Counted from the first letter of the stretch, positions 8,459-37,752 are shown. The stretch is DNA of 64,000 nucleotides from IMGVR_UViG_3300047548_001236:62001-126000, one strand, 5' to 3'. The notes: generated from the letters alone by a model not told the origin. Numbers and translations are program-made.

Positions 8459-8531
8459 TATAAATAAGCGTGTAGTTCGCGGAATTTGTGGTGATCTTCC
8501 CAACTACTCTAGAAACACAAGGAGTTCCAGC
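8459..8531 (+). promoter_or_regulatory. late promoter plus hairpin leader of GIY-YIG gene
   Basis: TATAAATA, GTAGTT/AACTAC stem, CTACTCTAGAAAC, AGGAG. Confidence 0.7.
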
Positions 8532-9149
8532 ATGAATATTTATTACGTCTACGCCTACATTCGTCATACAGACGGTACACCTTACTATATTGGTAAAGGT
8601 AGGGGTAACCGCGCTTACGCGAAGCATAAAGTAGCTGTTCCAAAAGATCGCAACCGGATTATCTTTATCGAAACAAAACTCACGGAAGTAGGTGCAATAG
8701 CTATCGAACGGAGATTGATACGATGGTGGGGTAGAAAAGATAACGCTACTGGTATTCTTCATAACCGTACAGATGGTGGTGAGGGTACCTCGGGTGTTAT
8801 ACATACACCAGAAAGAAATCAGAAAATTAGCGCCTCGTTGCGCGGGAGGTCGAAGTCTTTAATACACCGCGAGAACCTTAGTAAATCCAACAAAGGTGTT
8901 CAAGCGGGTTCCAAAAATCCTATGTTCGGTAAGACCCATTCAGACGAAGTCAAACGGACTCACTCTGAACGTATGAAAGGAAATCAGAATAGTAAAGGGC
9001 GTGTGTTGTCGGAAGAATCGCGGGCCAAAATGTCAGCCCGCGCTAAGAATCGTGTGATGTCTCCATGCCCTCATTGTGGTGTGATCTGTTCTGGTTCAAA
9101 TTACACGAGATGGCACGGAGACAACTGTCGATCAAAAATCGTAGCGTGA
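8532..9149 (+). mobile_element. free-standing GIY-YIG homing endonuclease with NUMOD3-like repeats
   Basis: [20 protein letters not shown] motif, NRTDGGEG, repeats [30 protein letters not shown]; antisense to neighbours. Confidence 0.9.
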
Positions 9150-10592
9150 ATTGTTGATCACTTTCAACATCATTGCATACGGGGTGTAGTCGTCAGGGTT
9201 GGCTCCAAGAACTGCAGCCATAATAGCTGGGCTGAATCCGGAGACGATGGCTACCCCCTTGTCGTTCATCTTGATTGGCGACTGGTCAGCGCTAGAACGA
9301 GCAGTCAAGTTCCAGAAGATGATTGCAGGCATCTTATAACCAGCCTCGCTGTACTTACGCTTGATCATTCCCATGGCATTGTCATCGTAGCGAACACACG
9401 CGTCAAACTGCATGTCAGAAAGCACGATCACATAGTCGGGCATATCCTCTTGCGAGACGTTGCCCTTCTTTGCTACCTGCAGCACAGCTTCGAAAGCCGA
9501 ATGCAGGTTGGTGTTCATGCCCCACTCGGCACGGCTCAGCTGAGCATACTTCTGAGACAGAGTGCCCTTGAGCACATTGATCTTCGAGTTACCAGAGAAC
9601 GTCAGGAACATGTCCTTGAAGTCCGAGGAAGTGCGATCCGACAGGTAGAGACCCAGCGAGATGGCGACTTCCATAGCGGAAGTGTTACCAGCCAGAGGCT
9701 GTTCCATCGAGCCTGAAACGTCGACCATGGGCAGGATCTTGGTGTCACCGACGTAGTTGGGCAGAGCCTGGAACTGAGCGTCAGCAACAGCAGCGTTGCC
9801 CTTACGCAGCGACTTAACGACGTCGTAAGGGTAGACAGCACCCGCGTTGATCTTGACCTTGGGATCACGCTCCTCCTGAGGCTTCTGCAGCTCACGGATG
9901 TAAGCCGAGTATGCCTCTGCAGCGTTCTTACCAAACGCCTTCTGGTAGCGAGCCGAAGCCAGCGAAGGAACGTGCGAGAAGTTGATCTCGTCCCAGCGCT
10001 TTGCGCACATCAGCTGCTCGACGACGCGAGTCGAACCAACAAGGATCTGACGATACTCTTTAGGCGACAGCATCATGAACTTGCGCAGCTCATTGGCATG
10101 ACGCAGCTTCGCTTGCTTGCCAGGAGTGATTGCCTTCTTGCTGGAAGTCAGGCGAGGTGCCCACTTCGCAGCCAGACCGTCACCGTTCATCAGAGCGTCT
10201 GCGAACATGCGCAGTGCGTTCTTACGGTTGATCGGATCCTTGTAGGCGAACAGGTCGTCCCAGCGACCCAGCTCAGGGATCTTGTGCATGATCTTACCTG
10301 CCAGTGCAGGGTTGATGGTTTCCAGAGCGCCCAGCAGGTTGCGGAACGTCTGGCGTTCACCAGCACCACCACGAACGTCACGAGCCCACAGAAGGACGCG
10401 CATTGCCAGATTTTGATCTTCAGCCAGAGCTGCGGTGAACTCACGGCTCATGTCACGGCCACGGCCGGAACCGATTTTGCCGAACAGGTCAAGGACCTTC
10501 GAGTCCGAAGTAGCCCATGCCTTCATGCCGTTCTCAGTACGAGAAACTTCAGCGGACTTAGCAGTAGCGACAGCTTGAGAGAATTTAGCCAT
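9132..10592 (-). CDS. DUF2828-type TROVE/vWA protein (Ro60-like architecture)
   Basis: [30 protein letters not shown]; vWA MIDAS VDVSGSM, SDMQFD, IIFWNL, VSGFSP. Confidence 0.8.
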
Positions 10593-10598
10593 AATATA

Positions 10599-10662
10599 TT
10601 CCTTTCAGGTTAGTTTTTGGTTTGTTTTACAATAAACATTAGGTTCTGCTGAACCTAACCTT
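10599..10662 (-). promoter_or_regulatory. structured 5' leader of DUF2828 gene
   Basis: AGGTTAG/CTAACCT stem abutting the SD; alternative hairpin TTAGGTTC-AGCA-GAACCTAA. Confidence 0.6.
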
Positions 10663-10672
10663 TGGATCTTTG

Positions 10673-10906
10673 TTAGAGGATCATATGCCTTTTTCTAGCA
10701 TTTGTCAACGGTTTATTTGGTAGGTTATCCAATAAAGTTATATAACCTACAGTCTTGTGAATTAAGAACTTATCATAGAGTTCAGCAGCTAGCTTACTTT
10801 CTTTTTTCTGATAGAATAAAGGATCTTCCTGTTTTGATTTTGCTATATCAGCATGAATCAACTTCAATATGAAATCACATTCTTCTAATGATAAATTCAT
10901 TATCAC
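10673..10906 (-). CDS. hypothetical protein
   Basis: 77-aa ORF with GGAG RBS. Confidence 0.45.
   Translation of the reverse strand: MIMNLSLEECDFILKLIHADIAKSKQEDPLFYQKKESKLAAELYDKFLIHKTVGYITLLDNLPNKPLTNARKRHMIL
10680..10708 (-). promoter_or_regulatory. sigma70-type promoter for DUF2828 gene
   Basis: TTGACA-N17-TATGAT. Confidence 0.8.
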
Positions 10907-10916
10907 TCCTATTAGT

Positions 10917-35657: not shown

Positions 35658-35660
35658 ACT

Positions 35661-35861
35661 ATGAACCAACTGACCATTCAGGACCTCGCCATTGTTGTCA
35701 ACCTGATCGATGCGTGTGTCGAGCGCGGGTCTTTCAAGGGCAATGAGATCTACAACGTTGGCCAACTGCGTGAGAAACTGGCATCGATCGTAATCGCTGC
35801 TCAAAAGGCTGCAGAGCAAGAAGGCGGCGTTGAAACGTTCGAACCTACGGCTGGAGAGTAA
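35661..35861 (+). CDS. small hypothetical protein
   Basis: IDACVERGSFKGNE; between gp45 and gp44. Confidence 0.65.
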   Translation: MNQLTIQDLAIVVNLIDACVERGSFKGNEIYNVGQLREKLASIVIAAQKAAEQEGGVETFEPTAGE

Positions 35862-35874
35862 TCTCCAGCCTTTT
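35849..35874 (+). terminator. Rho-independent terminator
   Basis: GGCTGGAGA-GTAA-TCTCCAGCC-TTTT. Confidence 0.8.
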
Positions 35875-35918
35875 CCACCTACCACTGAAACAGATCTATA
35901 AAGAGGATCAACTATATT

Positions 35919-36872
35919 ATGGCAATTGACGTCAAAGAAGACGAATTTCTGTGGGTTCAGAAGTACCGTCCTATGAAGGTGGCTGATACGATTCTTCCTG
36001 ATCGTATGAAAAAGATCTTCGCAAAATTTGTCGAAGATGGAAACGTTCCAAACCTGATTCTCGCTGGTCCCCCTGGAACAGGGAAAACGACTGTTGCGAA
36101 AGCAATGCTCAACGAGATCGGTGCCGATTACATCGTGATCAACGGTTCGCTGAAAGGTGGAATCGACACGCTGCGCTATGAAATTCAGAACTTTGCTTCT
36201 GCTGTTTCGTTCGCTGGTGGTCGCAAGTATGTGATCATTGATGAGGCTGATTACCTCACGATTAACACACAGACTGCATTCCGCGGATTCATTGAGGAGT
36301 TCTCGAAGAACTGTGGATTCATCTTCACATGCAACTACAAAAACCGCATTATTCCAGCCCTTGTTGAGTCTCGCTTCTCGGAGATCGACTTCGTATTCGA
36401 GAATAGCGAAAAACCTCGTCTGGCCGCTGAGTTCTTCAAACGCGTTCGTGCGATCCTAGACCTGGAGCAGGTCCCCTATGAGCCGAAAGCAGTTGCGAAA
36501 GTAGTTGAGAAGTTCTTTCCTGACTTCCGTCGTGTGCTGGGCAACCTGCAGAAGTACGCAGCTTCTGGTAAGATTGATGAAGGAATCTTCGTCGACCTGT
36601 CTAAAGAGTCTCTTGAAGCTGTGTTCACCATGCTGAAAAACAAGCAATTCAGCGAGATGCGCAAGTGGGTGGCAGAGAACAGCGATCAGGATGCTAATGC
36701 TTTGTTTAGACAGATCTATGACATGGCAACGGACAAGATCGAGATGAAGAGCCTTCCAGGGTTTGTAGTCACACTGGCTGACTACATGTATAAGCATTCA
36801 TTTGTTGCGGATCCTGAGGTTAATATGGTTGCTTTCCTGACCGAGATTATGCTTGAATGCACCTTTAAGTGA
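35919..36872 (+). CDS. clamp loader large subunit gp44
   Basis: LWVQKYRP, GPPGTGKT, IIDEAD, FPDFRR. Confidence 0.95.
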   Translation: MAIDVKEDEFLWVQKYRPMKVADTILPDRMKKIFAKFVEDGNVPNLILAGPPGTGKTTVAKAMLNEIGADYIVINGSLKGGIDTLRYEIQNFASAVSFAGGRKYVIIDEADYLTINTQTAFRGFIEEFSKNCGFIFTCNYKNRIIPALVESRFSEIDFVFENSEKPRLAAEFFKRVRAILDLEQVPYEPKAVAKVVEKFFPDFRRVLGNLQKYAASGKIDEGIFVDLSKESLEAVFTMLKNKQFSEMRKWVAENSDQDANALFRQIYDMATDKIEMKSLPGFVVTLADYMYKHSFVADPEVNMVAFLTEIMLECTFK

Positions 36873-36879
36873 TGATGGA

Positions 36880-37674
36880 TCACAGCTCGATGGATGATTG
36901 TTTTATTATAAACCTAGACTTGCCGGTTTTTTCCATGCATTCTTTTGTCGAGCTGTATACCCTTCCCTCATATTGTATAGGTTTTGCTGTGTGTGGAACG
37001 CCGTTTTTATATTTGAGGGGAGCGATCCCCTCAACCCATCCATCTTCGATGAAGGATTGTAATTGGGATTCTTCAACGCACTTTCTAACGCCCATTTTTA
37101 CGATCATACGTCTTTTTTTACCATAATTTGGGTTCTTAGAAGGATCGATGTATCTTTGGGAGGCGTTTTCGGATATTTTTTTGCGGTGTGCCTGTGTAAA
37201 AACTCTACCCAATATCCAACCCCGTTCCATATATTCGCTAAGCGCATCAGCTCTAACAATCTTGGACTCGATCCCGTTATTGATCCACATCGTGTTTGAA
37301 TTCATGGTGCTTATATTTTGGATCATCTCGGTCCTAAGCTTTTCGTATAGTTTTGAGTTGATCGTCATTCCATTTTTATGTTTCATCGCCCATAGCGCAC
37401 TTCTCTGTGACCGCGAGGTCGGAAAAGTCCTCCATATCAACGTATGTGCAATGAAATGTTGTCTCGGCGTAAGATATACGCAATTCCACGGATTGTCTTT
37501 AAGAGAAGAAAATTGTGGGAACATGTCCCGTGCTTTTGGGCATATATGATGACGCTCCCAAGCTTTATTGGGGGAGGATGCGTTCTTCTCTTGACATTTT
37601 TGGATAAAGCTGACATACTTTATGAGGTAGTGTCTATTATGGTCTTTTAACGATAGTATAGCATAAATATCCAT
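36880..37674 (-). mobile_element. free-standing HNH homing endonuclease (MobE-like)
   Basis: ERHHICPK...NCVYLTPRQHFIAH; WINNG and GRV repeats; antisense insertion between gp44 and gp62. Confidence 0.88.
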
Positions 37675-37752
37675 GCTGGAAAGCTCCTTGTTAGTGGTTT
37701 CTAGAGTAGGTGGATTTCTCGGCAGTCATCGTGACCTACAACTTTATTTATA
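37675..37752 (-). promoter_or_regulatory. late promoter plus hairpin leader of HNH gene
   Basis: TATAAATA, GTAGG/CCTAC stem, CTACTCTAGAAAC, AGGAG. Confidence 0.7.

What the first reader, a model, noticed from the sequence alone, without database searches (positions are those of the whole stretch)
8459..37752. Unrelated homing endonucleases (GIY-YIG and HNH) share one 5' regulatory cassette
Seen at 8459-8534 (+) and 37672-37752 (-): TATAAATA-N4-TGTAG(T/G)TC(G/A)CG...CTACTCTAGAAAC...AAGGAG..TTCCAGC-ATG. The hairpin covaries (GTAGTT/AACTAC vs GTAGG/CCTAC), although the coding regions belong to different nuclease families. Established: T-even HEGs use late promoters and RBS hairpins. Inference: a portable promoter-plus-RNA module that recruits nuclease ORFs, or a conserved cis-regulatory RNA.
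Basis: partly seen in the sequence, partly recalled or inferred. Interest (0 to 1): 0.6.

Follow-up and report, generated by a model that had tools for sequence, protein, structure and literature searches.

The report
Shared leader cassette of phage homing nucleases
A roughly 90-base module (a T4-type late promoter, a conserved folded RNA leader and a fixed ribosome-binding region) sits in front of selfish nuclease genes of at least four protein families in uncultured T4-like phages and is swapped among them, so it is a real, portable expression cassette and not a coincidence between two genes.

Summary
The window lies in a 283-kb uncultured T4-like phage. Both sites carry TATAAATA, 5 nt, a two-part hairpin, TCTAGAAAC, a Shine-Dalgarno, CCAGC, then ATG-NNT-ATT-TAT. 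The genome holds two more copies outside the window. Pattern scans and covariance models found 75 distinct versions on over 100 viral or metagenome contigs. None were found in 186,000 prokaryote genomes or in Rfam, and blastn found none in cultured phages.

The hairpin (6 + 4 bp) is paired in about 97% of cells, and 9 of 10 pairs show compensatory changes. The unpaired internal-loop bases, the linker and the synonymous sites of codons 2-4 stay fixed. The first stem base lies exactly where a T4 late transcript should start.

The genes behind it are GIY-YIG, HNH, TnsA-like and T7-endonuclease-I-like nucleases, plus NUMOD3-only proteins. Identical hairpins precede different ORF families, with sharp homology boundaries. 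Of 36 genes with both flanks resolved, 25 lie antisense to both neighbours.

Best reading: an autonomous late-expression cassette whose mRNA begins with a base-paired structured leader, acting as a stabiliser and possibly a protein-binding site. It is not the T4-style hairpin that hides the ribosome-binding site. It is a new variant of a known kind. The function has not been tested experimentally.

The parts
8459..8466 (+). Site A late promoter, TATAAATA
   Evidence: TATAAATA is 7-fold enriched in the window (10 found against 1.4 expected). A gp55 homologue is encoded in the window.
8472..8507 (+). Site A leader hairpin: P1 8472-8477/8502-8507, internal loop CGC 8478-8480 and C 8501, P2 8481-8484/8497-8500, loop 8485-8496. 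G8472 is the predicted transcript start.
   Evidence: covariation; 5-nt spacing from TATAAATA in 41 of 53 copies; -7.7 kcal/mol, z -1.5.
8508..8516 (+). Site A invariant single-stranded linker, TCTAGAAAC
8519..8543 (+). Site A translation initiation region: AAGGAG, TTCCAGC, ATG 8532-8534, codons 2-4 AAT ATT TAT
   Evidence: synonymous sites of codons 2-4 are fixed across the family.
8532..9149 (+). ORF A, 205 aa: GIY-YIG-type homing endonuclease with NUMOD3 modules. It is antisense to both neighbours and overlaps the 3' end of the gene at 9132-10592 (-) by 18 nt.
37745..37752 (-). Site B late promoter, TATAAATA
37706..37739 (-). Site B leader hairpin: P1 37739-37734/37711-37706, internal loop CAC 37733-37731 and C 37712, P2 37730-37728/37715-37713. 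G37739 is the predicted transcript start.
   Evidence: -8.5 kcal/mol, z -2.15, 87% of the ensemble.
37697..37705 (-). Site B linker, TCTAGAAAC
37663..37689 (-). Site B translation initiation region: AAGGAG, CTTTCCAGC, ATG 37674-37672, codons GAT ATT TAT
36880..37674 (-). ORF B, 264 aa: HNH-type homing endonuclease with a NUMOD3-like C-terminus. It is inserted antisense between the gp44 clamp-loader gene (35919-36872, +) and the next + strand gene (37769/37781-38182).
19625..20140 (+). Homologue of the T4 late sigma factor gp55, the factor expected to read the cassette promoter
   Evidence: 31% identity, E 5e-18, G000:81631-82125, which is window 19631-20125.

Best explanation
The element is a self-contained, mobile late-expression cassette for free-standing homing-endonuclease genes in a clade of uncultured freshwater and wastewater T4-like phages.

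Proposed sequence of events:
1. The phage late sigma factor (gp55 type) reads TATAAATA (inferred).
2. Transcription starts 6 nt downstream, at the purine that is the first base of stem P1. The mRNA is therefore born with its 5' nucleotide already base-paired in a two-part hairpin (inferred from spacing).
3. A 5'-terminal stem-loop with no single-stranded overhang is the classic protection against 5'-end-dependent decay by RppH and RNase E (established for ompA, papA and the T7 gene 10 leader; inferred here).
4. The invariant unpaired bases (internal loop C-G/A-C and C, linker UCUAGAAAC) probably add a specific contact, either a protein or a tertiary interaction (inferred).
5. The linker, the AGGAG, the CCAGC spacer and the fixed A/U-rich codons 2-4 form a standard ribosome-loading site.

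Because the cassette brings its own promoter, leader and start, a nuclease ORF can be expressed late wherever it lands. This includes landing antisense to the host genes, which is the usual case.

The roughly 85 conserved bases also serve as a homology patch through which different nuclease ORFs exchange leaders. Shown here: identical leaders on different ORFs, with sharp homology boundaries.
For: - Two-site similarity and its anatomy.
- Family size: 4 copies in the 283-kb genome and 1-7 copies in five other viral records. There are 59 + 16 = 75 distinct versions.
- Structure: 9 of 10 pairs have compensatory changes, 94.7% of cells pair against 30-46% when slid, and 0 of 500 shuffles reach this. 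In the larger set, 725 of 750 cells are Watson-Crick.
- Start point: TATAAATA is exact in 53 of 59 copies. The spacer to the first stem base is 5 nt in 41 of 53. That base is G in 54 of 59 and A in 5. A gp55 homologue is present.
- Specificity: a hairpin-only model hits only the cassette copies in about 800 kb of five phage records. Other late promoters of the genome lack the element.
- Nucleotide-level constraint up to +12: codon 4 is TAT 48 times and TAC 0 times, against 68% TAT in gene bodies. Codon 3 is ATT 35 times and ATC 0 times, against 36% ATT in gene bodies. Codon 2 ends in T in 50 of 57.
- Downstream families: PF01541 GIY-YIG, PF01844 HNH, PF08722 TnsA-like, PF05367 Phage_endo_I, and NUMOD3-only proteins.
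- Portability: identical 36-nt hairpins sit on different ORF clusters. Homology runs from TATAAATA to the ATG only.
- Need for autonomy: 25 of 36 genes are antisense to both neighbours.
- 5'-terminal stem-loops as stabilisers: review PMC3997798 and the work it cites. The T7 phi10 leader has the same layout.
Against: - There are no transcript data. The start site, the strand and the late timing are all inferred. The only RNA-library evidence is an unstranded contig that also covers sequence upstream of the promoter.
- The hairpins are only moderately stable (-7.7 to -8.5 kcal/mol; z -1.4 to -2.2).
- A plain stabiliser does not explain the invariant unpaired bases.
- Stems almost never use G.U (3 cells), while A.C, which would be G.U on the other strand, occurs 9 times. 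The acting strand is therefore not settled.
- Two GIY-YIG genes of the same genome have a late promoter but no hairpin, so the leader is not required for endonuclease expression.
Confidence: 0.55

Rival explanations
1. The leader is mainly an operator. A phage- or host-encoded RNA-binding (or DNA-binding) protein recognises the conserved internal loop and the UCUAGAAAC linker and co-regulates all cassette-bearing nuclease genes as a regulon. The hairpin is a scaffold for that site and not a decay shield.
For: - Unpaired bases (C-G/A-C, C, UCUAGAAAC, CCAGC) are invariant or nearly so, while the stems turn over freely.
- Twelve-nt loops are identical in otherwise diverged contexts.
- The element is exclusive to nuclease genes.
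Against: - No candidate binding protein was identified.
- Loops fall into several unrelated length classes.
- No experiment bears on it.
- It is compatible with the best explanation and is not exclusive of it.
Confidence: 0.2
2. The selected structure acts on the opposite strand or at the DNA level. For example, it could be a processing, stabilising or weak termination signal in the host-gene transcripts that run antisense through the nuclease gene. Or it could be a cruciform or recombination signal that mediates modular shuffling in the manner of PeSL elements.
For: - 25 of 36 nuclease genes are antisense to both neighbours, so the complement of the hairpin lies in the host operon RNA just upstream of a host gene.
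- Pairs are about 97% Watson-Crick. A.C (G.U on the other strand) is seen 9 times and G.U 3 times.
- The cassette behaves as a recombination patch.
Against: - 9 against 3 is not significant, and the copies are not independent.
- The fixed 5-nt distance to TATAAATA, the purine at the first stem base, and the linked Shine-Dalgarno, ATG and codon bias all point to the nuclease strand.
- A simple terminator scan does not flag the complement.
- Five genes are co-oriented with their neighbours and keep the same element.
Confidence: 0.12
3. It is the classical T-even control. [quoted passage not shown] Late transcripts that start inside the structure are translatable, as for I-TevI, segB and Aeh1 mobE.
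For: - A late promoter plus a hairpin upstream of endonuclease genes is the known T4 theme (PMC2988022).
- The 7 bases after the ATG (TATTTAT) are complementary to the promoter.
- In site A the minimum-energy fold pairs the 5' half of the hairpin with the Shine-Dalgarno and AUG.
Against: - The conserved hairpin does not contain the Shine-Dalgarno.
- Predicted unpaired fraction of the initiation region is 0.44 in read-through transcripts and 0.49 in late transcripts.
- Promoter-to-codon pairing is predicted in only about 10 of 49 copies.
- A permutation test finds no co-variation between the 5' half of the hairpin and the initiation region (native -4.15 against permuted -4.09 kcal/mol; 640 of 2000 permutations as good).
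- Most copies are antisense to their neighbours, so sense read-through is unlikely.
Confidence: 0.04
4. There is no function. The similarity is only recent common descent of a duplicated 5' region that hitch-hikes with the nuclease genes.
For: Several copies are near-identical over the whole cassette.
Against: - Extensive compensatory changes exist in both stems.
- Flanks and ORFs are unrelated, while the internal loop, the linker and the synonymous codon positions stay fixed.
- The element spans phage records of 157 to 283 kb, and gp44 of the window's phage is no more than 60% identical to any other viral-contig gp44.
Confidence: 0.03

Closest known systems
Late-promoter plus hairpin control of T-even homing endonucleases (I-TevI, I-TevII, I-TevIII, segB, Aeh1 mobE; review PMC2988022)
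   Same: A TATAAATA late promoter lies immediately upstream of a homing-endonuclease ORF, with an RNA hairpin in the 5' region and expression expected late.
   Different: - In the T-even cases the hairpin contains the ribosome-binding site, and the late promoter lies inside it. Here the hairpin is upstream of the Shine-Dalgarno and starts at the predicted +1.
- The T-even hairpins are gene-specific. Here one homologous leader is shared by at least 4 nuclease families.
- Most T4 endonuclease genes are co-oriented with their neighbours. Here most are antisense.
- The nearest described oddity is seg43(25) of Aeromonas phage 25, which has a hairpin just upstream of the RBS that does not sequester it.
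Conserved 5'-UTR hairpins of endonucleases in metagenomic 'fractured gene' loci (Dassa et al. 2009, PMC2677866)
   Same: The loci are environmental T4-like phage DNA. Hairpins upstream of the start codons of unrelated endonuclease families (GIY-YIG and Vsr-like) carry TATAAATA and two conserved, mutually complementary motifs.
   Different: - Those endonucleases sit in the same orientation inside split host genes, and the hairpins were read as RBS-sequestering, with TATAAATA inside them.
- The motif sequences are in a supplement that I could not read, so identity with this cassette is untested.
- Covariation statistics, the start-site geometry, the antisense bias and leader swapping were not described there.
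PeSL mobile regulatory cassettes of T4-type phages (Arbiol et al. 2010, PMC2839356; Comeau et al. 2014, PMC4122927)
   Same: These are short conserved promoter-plus-stem-loop modules repeated in a T4-type genome. They act as homology patches for modular gene shuffling.
   Different: - PeSLs combine an early sigma-70-type promoter with a terminator stem-loop, and they flank ORFans in hyperplastic regions.
- This cassette has a late promoter, a leader hairpin downstream of the promoter, a fixed RBS and fixed first codons, and it is specific to nuclease genes.
- The 2014 PeSL paper (PMC4122927), the only one of the two searched, does not mention late promoters.
5'-terminal stem-loop mRNA stabilisers (ompA, papA, T7 gene 10 leader)
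   Same: The hairpin begins at the first transcribed nucleotide and is followed by a single-stranded stretch and a strong Shine-Dalgarno. The T7 phi10 leader even has UCUAGAAA directly after its +1 hairpin.
   Different: - There is no sequence or model similarity to T7 (5 bits).
- The stabilisers have no conserved internal loop.
- The stabilising role here is inferred and not measured.

Membership tests
T4-type late promoter | TATAAATA octamer placed so that transcription starts about 6 nt after its last A | tested here: met
   The octamer is exact in 53 of 59 distinct copies. A 5-nt spacer leads to a purine (G in 54, A in 5) in 41 of 53.
T4-type late promoter | The genome encodes the late sigma factor gp55 | tested here: met
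   A homologue lies at window 19631-20125 (E 5e-18). T4-like core genes gp43, gp44, gp46 and gp6 are present.
T4-type late promoter | Late, gp55-dependent transcripts start at the predicted base | not testable with these tools
   Only unstranded contigs of one RNA library were available.
T-even RBS-sequestering endonuclease hairpin | The hairpin includes the Shine-Dalgarno and/or the start codon | tested here: not met
   The consensus structure ends 12 or more nt before AGGAG.
T-even RBS-sequestering endonuclease hairpin | The initiation region is less accessible in read-through transcripts than in late transcripts | tested here: not met
   Unpaired fraction is 0.44 against 0.49. No covariation supports an anti-RBS pairing.
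Structured cis-acting RNA element | Base pairs are maintained by compensatory substitutions beyond controls | tested here: met
   9 of 10 pairs; 0 of 500 shuffles; slid controls pair at 30-46%. 725 of 750 cells are Watson-Crick.
Structured cis-acting RNA element | The element acts as RNA on the named strand | tested here: inconclusive
   G.U is seen 3 times and A.C 9 times. The geometry relative to the promoter and ATG favours the nuclease strand.
Known Rfam family | Match to any of 4227 covariance models | tested here: not met
   Nothing overlaps the cassette even at E up to 10.
PeSL mobile regulatory cassette | Early sigma-70-type promoter joined to a terminator stem-loop | tested here: not met
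   The promoter is the late octamer. The hairpin is downstream of it and is not followed by a T-run.
PeSL mobile regulatory cassette | A repeated module serves as a recombination patch between unrelated genes | tested here: met
   Identical leaders precede different ORF families, with sharp homology boundaries.
GIY-YIG homing endonuclease (ORF A) | GIY...YIG...R...E catalytic domain plus a DNA-binding module | tested here: met
   The N-terminus reads YVYAY..YYIGKG. The family profile hits GIY-YIG 9u75 (E 1.2e-3) and the I-TevI DNA-binding domain 1i3j. NUMOD3 scores E 1e-11. Pfam GIY-YIG itself is not reached for ORF A, but it is reached for other cassette ORFs.
HNH homing endonuclease (ORF B) | beta-beta-alpha-Me motif with HH...N...H | tested here: inconclusive
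   phrog_12434 'HNH endonuclease' scores E 1.8e-13. H42, H43, N64, H73 and H77 are invariant. There is no Pfam HNH hit for ORF B. The AlphaFold model has pLDDT 48.8 and is too poor to search with. Other cassette ORFs pass PF01844.

The most novel reading that the evidence does not exclude
The leader is a dedicated cis-regulatory RNA class for selfish nuclease genes. A trans-acting phage or host factor would read the conserved internal loop and the UCUAGAAAC linker and so license or restrain all homing endonucleases of a genome together. The same 85-base module would double as the recombination handle by which nuclease ORFs of unrelated folds are plugged in and out. It would be a late-gene, endonuclease-specific counterpart of PeSL shuffling, and a way for the phage to tame its parasites.
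Probability: 0.2. Interest if true: 0.75.

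Novelty: new variant of a known kind. Interest (0 to 1): 0.64.

Why it matters
Homing endonucleases shape phage genome mosaicism and exclusion between competing phages, yet how they are expressed outside T4 is hardly known.

- One standard, swappable promoter-leader-start module serves at least four nuclease families. This means the expression signals of these selfish genes are themselves a mobile, selected unit.
- That would explain how such genes can settle antisense inside essential operons. An example here is the insertion between the clamp-loader gene gp44 and the next gene on that strand.
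- The leader is a clean, strongly covarying RNA motif that is absent from Rfam. It could be added as a family and used as a marker to find free-standing nuclease genes, including unannotated or catalytically novel ones, in metagenomic phage contigs.
- It also offers a compact, context-independent late-expression part for engineering T4-like phages. And it gives a directly testable case of a 5'-terminal structured leader in phage late mRNA.

Tried and rejected
- **RBS sequestration in read-through transcripts.** Partition-function accessibility is 0.44 against 0.49. Promoter-to-codon pairing is predicted in a minority of copies. Rejected.
- **Anti-RBS alternative helix** (5' half of the hairpin against Shine-Dalgarno, CCAGC and AUG), suggested by the site A minimum-energy fold. 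The permutation test shows no covariation. Rejected.
- **Loop-to-CCAGC pseudoknot.** Only 3-4 possible pairs, the partner is invariant, and it cannot be tested. Dropped.
- **Terminator on the opposite strand.** Not flagged by the scan.
- **The two near-matches of the 13-mer** at 8256 (-) and 40691 (+) lie in coding sequence and are unrelated.
- **A hairpin at G000:193862 (-)** that begins GTAGATCAC is a different element in front of an unrelated small ORF.
- **Cultured phages.** blastn of the cassette found nothing. The test is weak for a 96-nt interrupted motif.
- **Prokaryote genomes.** The 3 pattern hits are not the element by the covariance model.
- **T7 phi10 leader.** It has the same layout, but the model scores only 5 bits, so it is an analogue and not a relative.
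- **Near-isogenic endonuclease-free allele of the gp44 locus.** The closest gp44 is only 60% identical, so insertion boundaries could not be mapped this way.
- **Reads.** Only contigs were available, with no ends or strand.
- **AlphaFold model of ORF B.** pLDDT 48.8; not used for a fold search.
- **Supplement S4 of Dassa et al.,** which holds their motifs, is not held.
- **Searches not used.** The large protein searches were not needed.

Full report
**What is in the window.** The window is bases 62001-126000 of a 282,855-bp viral record with 45% G+C. It carries T4-type core genes:
- DNA polymerase gp43 at 22910-25519
- clamp loader gp44 at 35919-36872
- a gp46-like gene
- baseplate gp6
- a homologue of the late sigma factor gp55 at 19631-20125

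Its polymerase is only about 44% identical to the nearest cultured phages, which are T4-like cyanophages. Near-identical DNA occurs in freshwater, sediment and wastewater metagenomes. It is therefore a deep-branching, uncultured T4-like phage. TATAAATA occurs 10 times in the window against 1.4 expected.

**The observation.** Each site reads, in order:
1. TATAAATA
2. five bases
3. a two-part hairpin
4. TCTAGAAAC
5. a few bases
6. AGGAG
7. two to four bases
8. CCAGC
9. ATG, then NNT ATT TAT

ORF A (8532-9149) is a GIY-YIG-type endonuclease with NUMOD3 modules. ORF B (37674-36880) is an HNH-type endonuclease by PHROG families and conserved residues. The two proteins resemble each other only in the C-terminal NUMOD3 region (hhalign probability 92.6%). 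The shared 5' region is therefore not a by-product of gene homology.

**It is a family.**
- A script and a covariance model found two more copies in the same genome, outside the window. One is at G000:8165-8259, in front of a second GIY-YIG gene. The other is at G000:236852-236944, in front of an HNH gene. In that fourth copy the promoter sits 18 nt further upstream.
- Two pattern scans of IMG/VR and one of JGI metagenomes were followed by the covariance model R1. They gave 97 + 33 hits and 75 distinct versions.
- Single viral records hold 1 to 7 copies.
- The element is absent from Rfam. It is absent from one genome each of 185,579 prokaryote species: the 3 pattern hits are not confirmed by the model.
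- It was not found by blastn in 50,697 cultured-phage records. That is a weak test.
- In 80 random gp44 neighbourhoods of related phages (459 kb) it occurs once, again in front of a GIY-YIG gene placed head-to-head with gp44.

**Structure.**
- RNAalifold predicts P1 (6 bp), an asymmetric internal loop (5' C-G/A-C, 3' C), P2 (4 bp) and a variable loop.
- On 22 distinct copies, 94.7% of cells pair and 9 of 10 pairs show changes on both sides. None of 500 shuffles reaches the observed covariation, and slid controls pair at 30-46%.
- On all 75 versions, 725 of 750 cells are Watson-Crick, 3 are G.U and 9 are A.C.
- The stems turn over freely (for example GTAGAT/ATCTAC, GTCGGT/ACCGAC, GCCGAT/ATCGGC, ATGGTT/AACCAT, GTGACT/AGTCAC). 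Meanwhile the internal-loop bases, TCTA(GAAAC), CAGC and the bases after the ATG stay fixed.
- Codon 4 is TAT in 48 copies and never TAC, against 68% TAT in the gene bodies. Codon 3 is ATT in 35 copies and never ATC, against 36% ATT in the gene bodies. Codon 2 ends in T in 50 of 57. The constraint is therefore on nucleotides and reaches +12.

**Geometry.**
- TATAAATA is exact in 53 of 59 versions. The first stem base lies 5 nt after it in 41 of 53, and that base is a purine in all 59. This is the canonical T4 late start (established knowledge of T4 late promoters). A late transcript would therefore begin with its first nucleotide paired.
- Other late promoters of the genome lack the element.
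- A hairpin-only model (R2) finds nothing but the cassette copies in about 800 kb of five phage records.
- The leader is not needed by every endonuclease. Two GIY-YIG genes of the genome have a bare late promoter.

**What lies behind it.** Pfam and PHROG scans of representatives give the following:
- several GIY-YIG subfamilies (PF01541 over threshold for L014 and L072)
- HNH (PF01844 for L062)
- a TnsA-like endonuclease with a C2H2 finger (PF08722, E 1e-20, L046)
- a T7-endonuclease-I-like protein with C2H2 and NUMOD3 (PF05367, L176)
- small NUMOD3-only proteins
- a few unknowns

Some intact cassettes precede ORFs of only 12-30 codons.

**Portability.**
- The same 36-nt hairpin, loop included, precedes ORFs of different clusters. 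The site A hairpin also fronts a Seg-like 'MIYLYVKTHN' gene on another contig. Another hairpin fronts three ORF types.
- Aligning site A with two such loci shows identity from TATAAATA to the ATG, with unrelated sequence on both sides when the ORF differs.
- Conversely, one ORF family carries different hairpin variants.

This is the signature of recombination at the cassette.

**Context.**
- In 25 of 36 cases with both flanks resolved, the nuclease gene is antisense to both neighbours. In 5 it is co-oriented.
- The neighbours include gp44, gp6, a tail-sheath stabiliser, a ClpP-like protease and an RNA ligase.
- Both window copies are antisense. ORF B sits between gp44 and the next + strand gene. 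ORF A overlaps the 3' end of the gene at 9132-10592 by 18 nt, and its promoter abuts a sigma-70-like promoter for the divergent gene.

A gene in that orientation cannot borrow host transcription, which gives a reason for an autonomous cassette.

**Mechanism.** I favour an autonomous late-expression cassette. The phage late sigma factor reads the promoter. The 5'-terminal structured leader protects the message from 5'-end-dependent decay. That role is established for ompA, papA and T7 gene 10 (review PMC3997798). The T7 phi10 leader, checked in NC_001604, has the same layout and even UCUAGAAA after its +1 hairpin, but it is not related by the model. The linker, Shine-Dalgarno, spacer and first codons then form a standard ribosome-loading site.

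All steps after the sequence facts are inferred.

The invariant unpaired bases suggest an added specific contact, so a trans-acting binder is the main rival or complement.

I tested and rejected the classical T-even model:
- The hairpin excludes the Shine-Dalgarno.
- Accessibility of the initiation region is alike in read-through and late transcripts.
- An alternative helix seen in the site A fold has no covariation support.

The near-absence of G.U, the excess of A.C and the antisense bias leave open a role on the other strand or in DNA.

**Comparison with what is known.**
- The theme of a late promoter plus a hairpin before endonuclease genes is textbook T4 (PMC2988022).
- Dassa et al. 2009 reported conserved hairpins with TATAAATA before GIY-YIG and Vsr-like genes in metagenomic split-gene loci (PMC2677866).
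- PeSL cassettes show that promoter-stem-loop modules mediate shuffling in T4-type phages, but those are early promoters with terminators.
- No paper in the library holds the motif.

What is new here:
- one homologous, strongly covarying leader that does not hide the RBS
- its start-site geometry
- its sharing by at least four nuclease families
- the direct evidence of leader swapping
- the antisense bias

I class it as a new variant of a known kind.

**Limits.**
- The copies are related, so counts of cells are not independent events.
- The pattern scans imposed some of the invariant blocks. The model searches and the hairpin-only model relax this only in part.
- The ORF orientation calls are mechanical.
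- Reads were available only as contigs, laid on 4,001 bases. They show a depth spike at 8474-8607 in wastewater metagenomes, as expected of a multicopy element. They also show an RNA-library contig over 8414-8670, which proves neither transcription nor strand.

Noticed in passing
window 8429-8457 (- strand): A sigma-70-like promoter (TTGACG, 17 nt, TATTAT; 10 of 12 matches) lies back-to-back with the site A late promoter and points at the divergent gene 7794-8405. The cassette boundary therefore coincides with the neighbour's own promoter.
   Followed up: partly
L092 (T7 NC_001604) 105-170: The T7 phi10 leader has the same layout: a +1 hairpin, then TCTAGAAA, then AAGGAG. The 8 bases after the hairpin are identical to the cassette linker. 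The covariance model sees no relationship (5 bits).
   Followed up: yes
all 75 cassette versions (A5, A7): Stem pairs are about 97% Watson-Crick. There are only 3 G.U cells but 9 A.C cells, which would be G.U on the opposite strand. That is unusual for an RNA motif and leaves the acting strand open.
   Followed up: partly
G000:236836-236944 (outside the window; L038): The fourth copy has its TATAAATA 18 nt further upstream, with an extra mini-hairpin (GCAA...TTGC) inserted before the conserved hairpin. In this copy and in the G000:8174 copy, the bases after the ATG read TATAAATA on the opposite strand (G000:236942 and 8257).
   Followed up: partly
window 40594-40690 (+): Another late promoter is followed by a strong hairpin starting at the predicted +1 (AGGAGA...TCTCCT; -19.9 kcal/mol for the first 50 nt). 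It lies before ORF 40687-41118 and is unrelated to the cassette.
   Followed up: no
window 45570-45598: Two TATAAATA octamers on opposite strands lie 21 bp apart, forming a divergent late promoter pair.
   Followed up: no
L039, L068, L191, L050 (other contigs): Intact cassettes are followed by ORFs of only 12-30 codons. These look like decayed endonuclease genes that have kept their leader.
   Followed up: no
L013, L028, L011, L033, L023, L016, L178, L207: Small cassette-driven proteins (125-154 aa) have NUMOD3 repeats or no Pfam hit and no recognisable catalytic domain. They may be DNA-binding remnants or an undescribed nuclease type.
   Followed up: partly
window 9132-10592 (-) and 13771-15024 (-): Near site A the phage encodes a 486-aa protein of PHROG 850 ('RNA-binding protein') and a tRNA nucleotidyltransferase.
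   Followed up: no
window 8474-8607: In two wastewater metagenomes, summed contig depth over the cassette and the first codons is 5-10 times that of the flanks. Contigs diverge at 8563. Many other loci in those samples therefore share the module.
   Followed up: partly
G000:165040-165234 (+) and 53917-54159 (-): Two further GIY-YIG genes of the same genome have a TATAAATA about 25 nt before the ATG but no hairpin leader. The phage thus uses two different designs for endonuclease expression.
   Followed up: partly
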